Virus record (IMG/VR): IMGVR_UViG_3300046616_000314
Location: 496,001 to 560,000 of that record
Strand: one strand, 5' to 3'
Length of the DNA stretch: 64,000 bases
The notes beneath the pieces are model-generated. The model ran no database searches and was not told the DNA's origin. It saw only the letters and a program-made list of their open reading frames with translations. Position numbers and translations under genes: made by a program. How positions within the stretch are numbered: the stretch's first letter is position 1; every line of letters starts with the position of its first letter. Shown piece by piece: positions 46,561 to 47,891 of this stretch.

Positions 46561-46591
46561 GAAAAAAGCCCTGACCGAAGCCAGGGCTTTT
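46561..46591 (-). terminator. Rho-independent terminator ending the large non-coding transcript
   Basis: AAAAGCCCTGGC-TTCG-GTCAGGGCTTTTTT on the minus strand. Confidence 0.9.
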
Positions 46592-47857
46592 ATAAGGTCG
46601 AAGAGAACAGCGAAACCGGCGTACTGAGGGTCTGACCCAACATGCGCCCCTTACCGCCGGGTACACGGGAATGGCATGTCTCTATGCTTCGTCTCTTCGA
46701 TAAGTGTGCTCTTGCGAGCGAATTGGTTCCGAAGGAAGGATTTTTACCCCCGACCGTTCGCCGAACTAGCGACCGCTCTTGCACAAACTTTCGTTTGCCC
46801 CCGTTTAGTCGCGGCGCCACGACATCGGGTCTGAGCTACTTCGAACTTTGATGCTCATTCGAGCAAATGGATATCGAAGGGAGGATTTATACCTCCGTCC
46901 TCTCCCGCTGTTAGCAGGACGCTCTTGCCCCTCAACCGTTTCTTACTGGTGCGTATGCATCCGCAATCAGTTCATAACGATTGAAGCCTGATGTAAGCGG
47001 TCATTAAGACACCGAAGGTCTCCTAACTTACCCCGCCTAGTCTCATCATCTGAGCTACTTCGAACTTGTGTGCCCATCGGGCAAAACTGTTGATCGTACT
47101 CTCCGACCTGTCACGACTAGCATGATCCCTGATTTTCATCAAGTCCAACATATGCGCGCTCGTTCCGCAAGCTTACCTTGCCCATCGGGCGAATTGGCGG
47201 GGGCACTTCCCTCTTCGACGGGATCGCTCGCGCGGGGCAATCCCAAAGCCAAAGTGTGAAGGCGGAACCTACCCCCTGCGTCATGGCATTTCGACCACGC
47301 AGGTTTTGACTCCGCTTTTTCAGCCTATCTCCGGGTGATATCACTTCCCGTACCTCGGCGTCTACTCGTTTGCCCATTCAGGCAAATTTTACGGTATCAC
47401 CTTCATCTATCTCATGCGGTGCAGCATGGGACTCGAATCTGGCTTCCCGAAGGACCCGCTTACCGCTCCTGCGCTATGGGCACTACTCCATCCGCTTAGG
47501 ACCGGTGCGCTGACCAGTCTGATTGTGGGTGGGTCGCTACTCCCACTGTCGGCATTCCTCCAAGGTGCTCCCTGGCTGCTCCACCGTCTCTTTGGACTTA
47601 ACGGTTCAGCACCGCGCCAAGTAATTGTTTTAGGTCGGTCTCTCACCCGCTTCACTACGTTCCACGAGTTTGGGGATCAGCCGAAGGCTTAGCCACCAGA
47701 GATTTTCAAACGCAGACTGATAACAGAACCAGTCCGATGTACGTCCCTACCTATCTTGATCCGAAGACCAAGAATAAAAGTGAGTGGAGCGCAAGCGCAT
47801 CAACACTCAAGTATCACTGGACTTACCGGTCACACCCTCAACCGCGCCGTGTTTCTC
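46592..47857 (-). ncRNA. Candidate giant structured non-coding RNA (~1.3 kb)
   Basis: No credible ORF; own promoter and terminator; repeated hairpin/T-loop-like modules; 19-nt direct repeat at 46830 and 47049. Confidence 0.7.
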
Positions 47858-47863
47858 ATCTAC

Positions 47864-47891
47864 ACTCTACACTAGTTCAAACTAGTGTCAA
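47864..47891 (-). promoter_or_regulatory. Promoter P2 with an embedded palindrome
   Basis: TTGACA-N16-TAGAGT; ACACTAGT-N4-ACTAGTGT at 47869-47888. Confidence 0.75.

What the first reader, a model, noticed from the sequence alone, without database searches (positions are those of the whole stretch)
46561..47891. About 1.3-kb ORF-free transcription unit: candidate giant ornate RNA
Seen: in an otherwise gene-dense genome this stretch has only short, mutually overlapping ORFs without RBS or phage codon bias. It is bounded on the minus strand by a near-consensus promoter (47891-47864) and a UUCG terminator (46591-46561) and is full of short GC hairpins with GNRA/UUCG-type loops. Established: GOLLD and ROOL are large structured RNAs often found near phage tRNA clusters, roughly 600-800 nt. 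Inference: this is a larger relative or a new class, potentially a multimeric RNA scaffold.
Basis: partly seen in the sequence, partly recalled or inferred. Interest (0 to 1): 0.85.

Follow-up and report, generated by a model that had tools for sequence, protein, structure and literature searches.

The report
Phage non-coding RNA built from tRNAs
A 561-kb soil phage carries a 1.3-kb gene with its own promoter and terminator that makes no protein; it appears to encode structured RNA partly built from duplicated, remodelled tRNA genes, so it is a real and unusual non-coding RNA locus but not a relative of the known giant RNAs GOLLD or ROOL.

Summary
Window 46,529-48,379 has no credible ORF. On the minus strand a strong sigma-70-type promoter (47891-47864) and an intrinsic terminator (46591-46564) bound a transcript of about 1,300 nt. 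A second, similar promoter lies 400 nt upstream.

The GOLLD/ROOL interpretation is not supported. No Rfam family matches, even at E<=10.

The RNA is modular. Its 3' third holds two paralogous tRNA-derived units (47064-46868 and 46845-46724). Each has a 6- or 7-bp acceptor stem, U8-A9, and a GCUC/GAGC D stem enclosing a 127- or 54-nt insertion. Each also has a defective anticodon arm, a T arm with a non-canonical loop, and an encoded CCA. Unit 2 aligns with a real phage tRNA-Asn(GUU).

Five copies of a conserved spacer hairpin punctuate the RNA, three of them directly after a CCA. The same hairpin occurs in the non-canonical part of one other phage's tRNA operon.

Five RNA-library runs hold near-identical fragments of this stretch; a tail-sheath control of equal length is held only by DNA runs.

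Most likely this is a non-coding operon giving stable tRNA-like RNAs, comparable in concept to the T4 species 1 and 2 RNAs. Its function is unknown; tRNA mimicry is my guess. Too few homologues were found for a proper covariation test.

The parts
48269..48297 (-). Upstream promoter P1 (TGCTTGACA-17-TAGATT)
   Evidence: Same promoter class as P2. No terminator lies between P1 and P2.
47892..48268 (-). ORF-free leader or extra unit of about 375 nt, transcribed from P1 and possibly read through into the main RNA
   Evidence: No Rfam match. Holds a string resembling the module start (47926-47905).
47864..47891 (-). Promoter P2 (TGCTTGACA-16-TAGAGT); inferred transcription start near 47857
47632..47857 (-). 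5' domain alpha. Begins GAGAAACACGGCGCGG...ACCGGUAAGUCC and folds as a multi-branched domain.
   Evidence: The motif is repeated in domain beta, 225 nt downstream.
47387..47631 (-). 5' domain beta (GGCGCGGUGCUGAACCGUUAAGUCC...)
   Evidence: An adapter-flanked 129-nt insert at 47448-47576 in a run guessed to be RNA lies inside it.
47371..47386 (-). Spacer hairpin E (UUUGCCUGAAUGGGCA; its stem holds a U.G pair)
   Evidence: A divergent homologue read in a freshwater metagenome has compensatory changes here.
47194..47370 (-). Module S1. Holds the 10-nt palindrome GUGAUAUCAC (47344-47335). Its 3' part has an acceptor-like helix GGGGGUA (47276-47270) / UGCCCCC (47205-47199) followed by G-CCA.
   Evidence: Read from the sequence and folds. 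A 151-nt metatranscriptome contig covers 47200-47350.
47179..47193 (-). Spacer hairpin C (UUCGCCCGAUGGGCA), directly after CCA-A
47086..47178 (-). Module S2
   Evidence: No recognisable tRNA features.
47071..47085 (-). Spacer hairpin D (UUUGCCCGAUGGGCA)
46868..47064 (-). tRNA-derived unit 1 (197 nt). Acceptor stem UUCGAAG/CUUCGAU, U8-A9, D stem GCUC/GAGC around a 127-nt insertion, G26. Anticodon-like arm UCCUG-CUAACAG-CGGGA, which can close to a triloop. T arm GGAGG-UAUAAAU-CCUCC, tail AUCCA.
   Evidence: (its lone MFE is a cloverleaf).
46852..46867 (-). Spacer hairpin A (UUUGCUCGAAUGAGCA), directly after CCA
   Evidence: The 19-mer including it is exact in L005/L006.
46724..46845 (-). tRNA-derived unit 2 (122 nt). 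7-bp acceptor stem, U8-A9, D stem GCUC/GAGC around a 54-nt insertion. Arm GUCGC-UAGUUCG-GCGAA, with GUU kept but A33 and C37. Variable loop CGGUC, T arm GGGGG-UAAAAAU-CCUUC, tail A-CCA.
   Evidence: Aligns to Ruegeria phage RpAliso tRNA-Asn(GUU).
46707..46722 (-). Spacer hairpin B (UUCGCUCGCAAGAGCA, GNRA loop), directly after CCA-A
46596..46700 (-). Unit 3 (105 nt). Same UCGAAG start, closed by the 9-bp helix UCGAAGAGA/UCUCUUCGA. No T arm and no CCA.
46558..46591 (-). Intrinsic terminator (12-bp stem, UUCG loop, U run). The promoter of the next gene follows.

Best explanation
This is a non-coding RNA operon. Host sigma-70 RNA polymerase starts at about 47857 on the minus strand, and possibly also at about 48262, and stops at the 46591-46564 terminator.

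The roughly 1.3-kb transcript is a chain of structured modules. They arose by duplication and remodelling of tRNA genes. At least units 1 and 2 keep the acceptor stem, D stem, T-arm geometry and an encoded CCA. They have lost a working anticodon loop and the D-loop/T-loop elbow, and gained 54-127-nt insertions.

Modules are separated by a conserved 15-16-nt hairpin, often in the arrangement CCA-(A)UU-hairpin.

I infer that host tRNA-processing enzymes (RNase P at module 5' ends, RNase E and exonucleases at the AU-rich site after CCA) cut the precursor into several stable RNAs of 100-200 nt. The precedent is the T4 species 1 and 2 RNAs, made from the T4 tRNA cluster.

For function, I guess tRNA mimicry: occupying host or defence factors that bind the acceptor/T-arm half of tRNAs without taking part in decoding.

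Shown: the non-coding nature, the signals, the modular tRNA-derived anatomy, conservation of structure between paralogues, and presence in RNA libraries. Inferred: processing and function.
For: Non-coding.

Signals.

tRNA-derived units:
- A descriptor requiring a 5/5-bp T stem, a 7-nt loop, an adjacent acceptor stem of at least 6/7 bp and N(1-2)-CCA finds the true tRNAs plus units 1 and 2. The chance rate is about 0.15 sites per kb.
- In both units the acceptor 5' strand is followed by UAGCUCAG. That 8-mer occurs in the window only in 7 true tRNAs, the two units and one other site.
- Unit 2 aligns over about 74 nt to a real tRNA-Asn(GUU), including ACGGUCGGGGG and CUUxGGAxCCA.

Structure kept after duplication: the units are about 70% identical. 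The anticodon-like arm has two double-compensatory pairs. The T arm and acceptor stem have four changes that keep or restore pairing, three of them G.U-compatible. These G.U pairs exist only on the minus-strand RNA.

Spacer hairpin:
- 5 copies lie in 1.3 kb, against 3 weak coding hits in the rest of that strand.
- Two stem pairs covary; 88.6% of cells are paired, rising further once one misaligned row is allowed for. 5 of 500 shuffles reach the observed score, and slid controls give 23-46%.
- CCA precedes the hairpin in 4 of 7 copies.
- The composite motif occurs in IMG/VR only here and in the L005/L006 phage. There it sits in the non-canonical part of a promoter-driven tRNA operon.

Expression hint: five RNA-library runs, four of them metatranscriptomes of 13-16 M letters, hold part of this stretch. 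The two that were laid carry pieces with 0-1 mismatch. An equal-length tail-sheath control is held by DNA runs only.
Against: - No transcript ends were seen, so processing is pure inference.
- The 5' 800 nt shows no tRNA features.
- Only one other phage and one stray read share motifs, so there is no real covariation statistic across orthologues.
- nhmmer finds no alignable similarity to L005 or T4.
- The control search for RNA runs is not exhaustive (caveat printed).
- The one adapter-bearing insert has Read-2 adapter plus GGG abutting 47448 on the plus strand. In a template-switch stranded kit that would mean a plus-sense RNA. The kit is unknown.
- Local folding z-scores are only mildly negative.
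Confidence: 0.5

Rival explanations
1. One intact giant ornate RNA of 1.3-1.7 kb works as a single folded particle or multimer, as GOLLD, ROOL and OLE do. The tRNA-like modules are merely its building blocks.
For: There is a single promoter-terminator unit. The whole-length MFE pairs the 5' end (GGCGCGGUUGAGGGU) with 3' sequence (ACCCUCAGUACGCCGG). A conserved 10-nt palindrome could mediate dimerisation. Large structured RNAs near phage tRNA genes have precedent (bioRxiv 10.1101/2024.12.08.627333, listed).
Against: No Rfam similarity to any large RNA. Encoded CCA ends followed by a conserved spacer point to cutting. In L005 the same elements are part of an ordinary tRNA operon. End-to-end pairing in a long MFE is common by chance.
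Confidence: 0.2
2. A decaying array of tRNA pseudogenes and junk spacer, still transcribed but without function.
For: Canonical tRNA features are lost: no Rfam tRNA hit at E<=10, the T loops are UAUAAAU and UAAAAAU, and unit 2 has A33. No close homologues exist in the phage or IMG/VR collections.
Against: After the T loop was remodelled, the units duplicated and diverged to about 70% identity. Every helix still survives through compensatory or wobble changes. The spacer hairpin covaries within the RNA, in a second phage and in a divergent metagenome read. The locus keeps a consensus promoter and a strong terminator. A gene-dense phage would be expected to lose 1.3-1.8 kb of junk.
Confidence: 0.15
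3. A long regulatory leader or antitermination cassette. The repeated boxB-like hairpins (GC stem, GAAN loop) recruit an N-like factor, or the RNA acts in cis or antisense on neighbouring genes.
For: The hairpins resemble lambda boxB in size and loop type (my own knowledge; not tested). A long untranslated transcript needs protection from Rho. The X7 insert orientation might indicate antisense RNA.
Against: A strong terminator and a fresh promoter separate the RNA from the downstream genes. The hairpins sit after CCA ends, not in a leader. No N-like gene was identified nearby.
Confidence: 0.06
4. The stretch encodes several small proteins.
For: ORFs of 63-92 aa exist.
Against: They overlap one another and have negative or near-zero codon scores. 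Seven of the eight have no RBS. One of them, tested as a protein query, found nothing. A divergent homologue read puts a stop and a 1-nt indel in the 86-aa frame (read).
Confidence: 0.03

Closest known systems
Phage T4 species 1 (rnaC, 139 nt) and species 2 (rnaD, 119 nt) stable RNAs
   Same: They are non-coding, stable RNAs encoded with phage tRNA genes on the same strand, and the record assigns them no function (annotation). rnaC has a T arm and an acceptor-like stem with extra sequence in between. rnaD shares short strings with the start of this RNA (AUGAGAAAC, ACCGGUAAGUC) and with unit 1 (hairpin plus CCxCUUACAUCA). Neither is in Rfam.
   Different: A covariance model built from 9 T-even rnaD sequences finds nothing here: best 10.3 bits, E 0.29, on the wrong strand. 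Smith-Waterman scores are not above shuffles. This locus is ten times longer, has its own promoter and terminator about 4 kb from the tRNA array, and has spacer hairpins that T4 lacks.
Canonical tRNA genes (Rfam tRNA), in particular phage tRNA-Asn(GUU)
   Same: Acceptor stem, U8-A9, GCUC/GAGC D stem, N26, 5-nt variable loop CGGUC, 5-bp T stem abutting the acceptor 3' strand, discriminator A and encoded CCA. Unit 2 aligns to RpAliso tRNA-Asn and keeps GUU at positions 34-36.
   Different: No hit to the tRNA covariance model even at E<=10, and none with ARAGORN at normal or lowered thresholds without introns. The D loop carries a 54- or 127-nt insertion. The T loop lacks U55 and C56. Unit 2 has A33 and C37. 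In unit 1, positions 32-38 and 33-37 can pair and close the loop.
GOLLD, ROOL and OLE (large ornate bacterial and phage RNAs)
   Same: Large size, no ORF, location near phage tRNA genes, many helices.
   Different: No match to any of their Rfam models. The composition is modular and tRNA-derived. No evidence for or against multimers.
tmRNA
   Same: tRNA-like ends (acceptor stem, T arm, CCA) around a large inserted body.
   Different: ARAGORN's tmRNA search and Rfam find none. Position 3:70 is C-G, not G.U. No tag reading frame was sought or seen, and the insertion sits in the D loop.
Non-canonical part of the tRNA operon of an uncultured phage (IMGVR_UViG_3300027996_002637 / 3300023210_000085; loci L005/L006)
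   Same: The same spacer hairpin and composite motif. A strong promoter is followed by non-tRNA structured sequence and an undetected 91-nt tRNA-like unit with acceptor AUUGCAG/CUGCAAU, T loop CUCGAAC and ACCA.
   Different: There the elements are followed directly by ordinary tRNAs in the same unit. No alignable similarity exists beyond the motifs. The two phages share little else.

Membership tests
GOLLD / ROOL / OLE (Rfam 15 models) | Match to the family covariance model | tested here: not met
   No match at gathering score over the whole window, nor at E<=10 over 46,000-48,600.
Group I/II introns, RNase P RNA, tmRNA, 6S, SRP RNA (Rfam 15) | Match to the family covariance model | tested here: not met
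   ARAGORN's tmRNA mode also finds none.
tRNA | Acceptor stem of 7 bp followed by discriminator and CCA | tested here: met
   Unit 2 has 7/7 pairs plus A-CCA. Unit 1 has 6/7 pairs plus AU-CCA.
tRNA | D stem at positions 10-13/22-25 with an 8-11-nt D loop carrying G18 G19 | tested here: not met
   The GCUC/GAGC stem is present, but the loop is replaced by an insertion of 127 nt (unit 1) or 54 nt (unit 2).
tRNA | 7-nt anticodon loop with U33 and purine 37, left open | tested here: not met
   Unit 2 has UAGUUCG, with A33 and C37. Unit 1 has CUAACAG with U33 and A37, but C32-G38 and U33-A37 can pair, and the MFE closes it to a triloop.
tRNA | T arm: 5-bp stem, 7-nt loop U54 U55 C56 R57 A58 | tested here: inconclusive
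   Stem and loop length are met, as are U54, R57 and A58. Positions 55-56 are AU or AA.
tRNA | Match to the Rfam tRNA model or a standard ARAGORN call | tested here: not met
   ARAGORN calls the units only with introns allowed and lowered thresholds, where it makes about 21 false calls per 64 kb.
T4 species 2 RNA (rnaD) | Match to a covariance model of T-even rnaD sequences | tested here: not met
   Model R1 built from alignment A3. Best window hit is 10.3 bits, E 0.29, on the plus strand.
T4 species 1 RNA (rnaC) | Sequence or structure similarity to rnaC | tested here: inconclusive
   The local alignment score is below the shuffle mean. Only short GAGUAGC-type strings are shared. No covariance model was built.
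Intrinsically terminated sigma-70 transcription unit | -35/-10 hexamers with 16-18-nt spacing, and a GC hairpin followed by a U run | tested here: met
   These are consensus matches only; transcription start and stop were not measured.

The most novel reading that the evidence does not exclude
A new class of large structured RNA that evolved from a tRNA gene array. The intact 1.3-1.7-kb transcript, or its set of products, displays several anticodon-less tRNA bodies with remodelled elbows. It acts as a multivalent sponge for host tRNA-binding factors, for example tRNA-targeting defence nucleases, CCA-end or acceptor-stem binders, or processing enzymes. This would give a megaphage an RNA-based counter-defence.
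Probability: 0.2. Interest if true: 0.8.

Novelty: new variant of a known kind. Interest (0 to 1): 0.6.

Why it matters
Phage tRNA clusters have long been known to carry stable RNAs of unknown function; the T4 species 1 and 2 RNAs are the example. Recent work shows that phage tRNAs can defeat tRNA-cleaving host defences (PMC10264068 and PMC11555353, listed).

This locus shows, in one place, tRNA genes duplicated and rebuilt into larger RNAs that cannot decode yet keep their helices under selection. If the products are stable and bind tRNA-recognising proteins, that would be a new RNA-based way for phages to manipulate or protect the translation apparatus. It would also be a worked example of how large structured RNAs can arise from tRNAs.

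It also cautions against reading every long ORF-free phage stretch as a GOLLD-like RNA.

Tried and rejected
- **Rfam.** Gathering and E<=10 searches gave only the 13 ordinary tRNAs elsewhere in the window.
- **Alternative genetic code.** Every frame has all three stop codons, and no suppressor tRNA is present.
- **Homologues through flanking proteins.** The ART-like 375-aa protein has no relative among 5.8 billion proteins. The peptidase C93 and phrog_4776 neighbours lead only to the source contig or to unrelated mycobacteriophages.
- **Homologues through spurious ORFs.** Nothing found.
- **Exact-motif scans.** The 19-mer AAGTTCGAAGTAGCTCAGA and the 19-mer around the palindrome hit only the source contig in IMG/VR. 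The first also found nothing in the GTDB genomes.
- **Composite hairpin motif in JGI metagenomes.** It returned only the L005/L006 phage plus three probable chance hits without tRNAs.
- **blastn and nhmmer** against 50,697 phage genomes, L005 and T4. Only terminator look-alikes and one tRNA-Asn turned up. The closest cultured relatives by terminase, Sinorhizobium phage Phosso and Agrobacterium phage Atu_ph07 (57% identity), gave no hit with the RNA.
- **T4 rnaD homology.** The eye-catching shared strings did not survive a covariance-model test.
- **ARAGORN with introns.** Discarded as evidence because of its false-positive rate.
- **SRP-like and boxB-like resemblances.** Seen by eye only. SRP is not supported by Rfam.
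- **Sliding-window folding z-scores.** Too weak to decide anything.
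Full report
**Source and setting.** The window comes from IMGVR_UViG_3300046616_000314, a 561-kb viral contig from a rhizosphere metagenome. It encodes a T4-type terminase, tail sheath and tube, UvsX, UvsY and gp32 homologues, two aminoacyl-tRNA-synthetase-like proteins and 13 tRNAs. By terminase (57% identity), its nearest cultured relatives are the jumbo phages Sinorhizobium Phosso and Agrobacterium Atu_ph07. No phage genome in INPHARED matches it at the DNA level.

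**Checking the observation.**
- From 46,529 to 48,379 no ORF exceeds 92 aa, and every frame holds TAA, TAG and TGA.
- The eight ORFs of 60 aa or more score -0.12 on a codon log-odds trained on the window's long genes. Those genes score 0.31 +/- 0.15, and real ~95-aa genes mostly 0.06-0.49. Seven of the eight have no Shine-Dalgarno-like motif.
- The minus strand has TTGACA-16-TAGAGT at 47891-47864 and a 12-bp UUCG-loop hairpin with a U run at 46591-46564.
- The promoter is one of three exact copies of a longer phage consensus, TGCTTGACA-N16/17-TAnAnT. One of the other copies sits 400 nt upstream at 48297-48269 with no terminator in between. The transcript may therefore be about 1.3 or about 1.7 kb.
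- Directly after the terminator, a new promoter and RBS serve the next gene.
- CUUCGG is eight-fold enriched on the minus strand. Several copies are helix strands rather than tetraloops. Local folding z-scores are only modestly low.

**What it is not.**
- Rfam 15 gives nothing here at gathering thresholds or at E<=10. That excludes GOLLD, ROOL, OLE, introns, RNase P, tmRNA, 6S, SRP and canonical tRNA.
- ARAGORN finds no tRNA or tmRNA at normal or lowered thresholds.
- With introns allowed, ARAGORN calls two units. That setting makes about 21 false calls per 64 kb, so I do not count it.

**Anatomy.**
- Self-comparison shows two paralogous stretches about 146 nt apart (46928-46839 and 46782-46695; 70% identity, E 9e-9). 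A 19-mer, AAGUUCGAAGUAGCUCAGA, is present twice.
- Read as RNA, each copy of UUCGAAG-UA-GCUC-AG is the 5' side of a tRNA-shaped unit.
- Unit 1 is 47064-46868 and unit 2 is 46845-46724. Each has an acceptor stem of 6/7 or 7/7 bp, U8-A9, and a GCUC/GAGC D stem enclosing 127 or 54 nt of extra hairpins.
- Each then has G26, a 5-bp arm, a short variable region, and a perfect 5-bp T stem with a 7-nt loop abutting the acceptor 3' strand. The tail is A(U)-CCA.
- Folded alone, unit 1 gives exactly this cloverleaf.
- A strict descriptor (T arm, adjacent acceptor stem, N-CCA) recovers the window's true tRNAs plus these two units. Its background is about 0.15 sites per kb.
- UAGCUCAG occurs only in seven real tRNAs, the two units and one other place.
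- Unit 2 aligns over about 74 nt with the tRNA-Asn(GUU) of Ruegeria phage RpAliso and still has GUU at positions 34-36.
- The units are not working tRNAs. The D loop is replaced. The T loops are UAUAAAU and UAAAAAU, with no U55 or C56. Unit 2 has A33 and C37. Unit 1's loop can zip up to a triloop.
- Unit 3 (46700-46596) starts the same way and is closed by a 9-bp helix, but lacks a T arm and CCA.
- Module S1 ends with a 7-bp helix, GGGGGUA/UGCCCCC, followed by G-CCA (read).
- The 5' 470 nt consists of two related domains that share GGCGCGGU...ACCG(G/U)UAAGUCC. I could not relate them to anything known.

**Spacer hairpin.**
- Five copies of UUYGCxx-loop-xxGCA lie in the RNA, at 47386, 47193, 47085, 46867 and 46722. 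The rest of that strand has three weak coding hits in 62 kb.
- Three of the five follow a CCA directly. Counting two copies in another phage, the figure is four of seven.
- The stem covaries: GCUC/GAGC, GCCC/GGGC, GCCU/GGGC and GCCU/AGGC. Two of five pairs change on both sides. 88.6% of cells pair, against 23-46% when partners are slid. 5 of 500 shuffles do as well, and one row is misaligned by MAFFT.
- The U.G pair in copy E, and the G.U pairs in unit 2's T arm and acceptor stem, exist only in the minus-strand RNA.

**Selection.**
- The two units share the remodelled T loop, so they duplicated after losing tRNA function. They then diverged to about 70% identity and kept every helix.
- In the anticodon-like arm, C-G became G-C and G-C became U.G, each with both sides changed. 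In the T arm, A-U and G-C became G.U. In the acceptor stem, U.U became U-A and U-A became U.G.
- That argues for a constrained structured RNA rather than a decaying pseudogene. With two sequences, however, it is an argument and not a statistic.

**Relatives.**
- Searches through flanking proteins, spurious ORFs and exact motifs found only the source contig.
- The exception is one uncultured phage, represented by L005/L006 and by L009-L011. It carries the exact hairpin-A 19-mer and the composite motif hairpin-N2-8-CGA(N)GUAG.
- In that phage the motifs lie between a strong promoter (11 of 12, just after a terminator) and a run of ordinary tRNAs. The surrounding sequence has no ORFs and contains an undetected 91-nt tRNA-like unit.
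- Beyond the motifs the two loci are not alignable.
- A single read in a freshwater metagenome is a divergent homologue of hairpin E and the sequence after it. It has compensatory stem changes, plus a stop and an indel in the overlapping 86-aa frame.

**Expression.**
- Five RNA-library runs hold part of the stretch. Four are rhizosphere metatranscriptomes of only 13-16 million letters.
- The two RNA-library runs that I laid carry 129- and 151-nt pieces with one mismatch each.
- An equal-length piece of the tail-sheath gene, searched the same way, is held by three DNA runs and no RNA run.
- This suggests an abundant or stable RNA, but it is not proof, and the tools themselves warn that the comparison is not exhaustive.
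- One insert carries both adapters, with GGG next to the Read-2 adapter on the plus-strand side. In a template-switching stranded kit that would indicate plus-sense RNA. The kit is unknown, so I record it as an unresolved point against the strand assignment.

**Comparison with T4.**
- The T4 record annotates two small stable RNAs, species 1 (rnaC) and species 2 (rnaD), at the end of its tRNA cluster. Rfam has no model for them.
- rnaC has a T arm and an acceptor-like stem around extra sequence. rnaD shares AUGAGAAAC and ACCGGUAAGUC with the first 40 nt of this RNA.
- I aligned rnaD from nine T-even phages, obtained a consensus structure with 10 covarying pairs, built a covariance model and searched 20 kb around the locus with filters off. 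The best hit was 10.3 bits (E 0.29) on the wrong strand.
- Local alignment scores are no better than shuffles.
- So this RNA resembles the T4 stable RNAs in what it is: non-decoding, tRNA-like and tied to a tRNA operon. It is not shown to be their homologue.

**Verdict.**
- The locus is real and non-coding. It is a composite, tRNA-derived structured-RNA operon.
- The most likely mechanism is host processing into several stable tRNA-like RNAs that mimic tRNA bodies. This is inference.
- The single-giant-RNA reading remains possible, and the pseudogene reading less so.
- I rate it a new variant of a known but poorly understood kind, with moderate to high interest.

Noticed in passing
window 48,974-59,000, minus strand (e.g. 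48974-49255, 49644-49922, 51057-51933, 52065-53284, 55393-55922, 56593-56919); also 44603-45088, plus strand: A large paralogous family of about 15 or more proteins of ~95 aa, interleaved with the tRNA genes. All end in a motif like F-x-x-E-E-D-A-x-x-F-K-L-K-W. The five members scanned against Pfam (44603-45088, 48974-49255) or PHROGs (44603-45088) had no match.
   Followed up: partly
window 48,880-48,960, minus strand: A further tRNA-like remnant, GUUGUAGCUCAGUUUUUUUGAGC...CCUUCGAACCCC, preceded by a TTGACA box. It is the only UAGCUCAG outside the true tRNAs and units 1 and 2, and it overlaps a plus-strand ORF (48630-48977).
   Followed up: no
L005:6253-7552 (IMGVR_UViG_3300027996_002637; same phage as L006, L009-L011): A strong promoter (TTGACA-16-TATACT with TG) is followed by about 630 nt of ORF-free, non-tRNA sequence and two spacer hairpins. 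A 91-nt tRNA-like unit follows at 7462-7552 (acceptor AUUGCAG/CUGCAAU, T loop CUCGAAC, ACCA) that ARAGORN and Rfam miss. Ordinary tRNAs come after it.
   Followed up: partly
window 47335-47344, minus strand: A perfect 10-nt palindrome, GUGAUAUCAC, sits inside a 29-nt block. That block differs at only two unlocated positions in a divergent freshwater homologue read. It could be an intermolecular pairing (dimerisation) site.
   Followed up: no
window 47448-47576: A contig from a run guessed to be RNA ('organism A') carries both Illumina adapters, with GGG next to the Read-2 adapter at the 47448 end. In a template-switch stranded library this would mean plus-sense RNA, opposite to the promoter, terminator and G.U evidence.
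   Followed up: partly
window 49926-51053, minus strand: A 375-aa protein with a weak, sub-threshold ART-PolyVal (ADP-ribosyltransferase) match. It has no relative other than itself among 5.8 billion proteins.
   Followed up: partly
window 1408-2670 (-) and 10849-12018 (+): Phage-encoded histidyl-tRNA-synthetase-like and tyrosyl-tRNA-synthetase-like proteins (PHROG matches). This shows heavy investment in tRNA biology in the same genome region.
   Followed up: no
window 45313-46023, minus strand: A secreted-looking BTLCP-type transglutaminase-like cysteine peptidase (Pfam Peptidase_C93, E 1e-25) lies two genes downstream of the RNA.
   Followed up: no
L013 (T4 70,908-71,171) and L014-L021: T4 rnaD is conserved in 735 phage records, and many annotate the region as 'hypothetical protein'. 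Its 5' 50 nt and 3' 25 nt are invariant across nine genera-level relatives. The middle hairpin covaries. Rfam has no model for it.
   Followed up: partly
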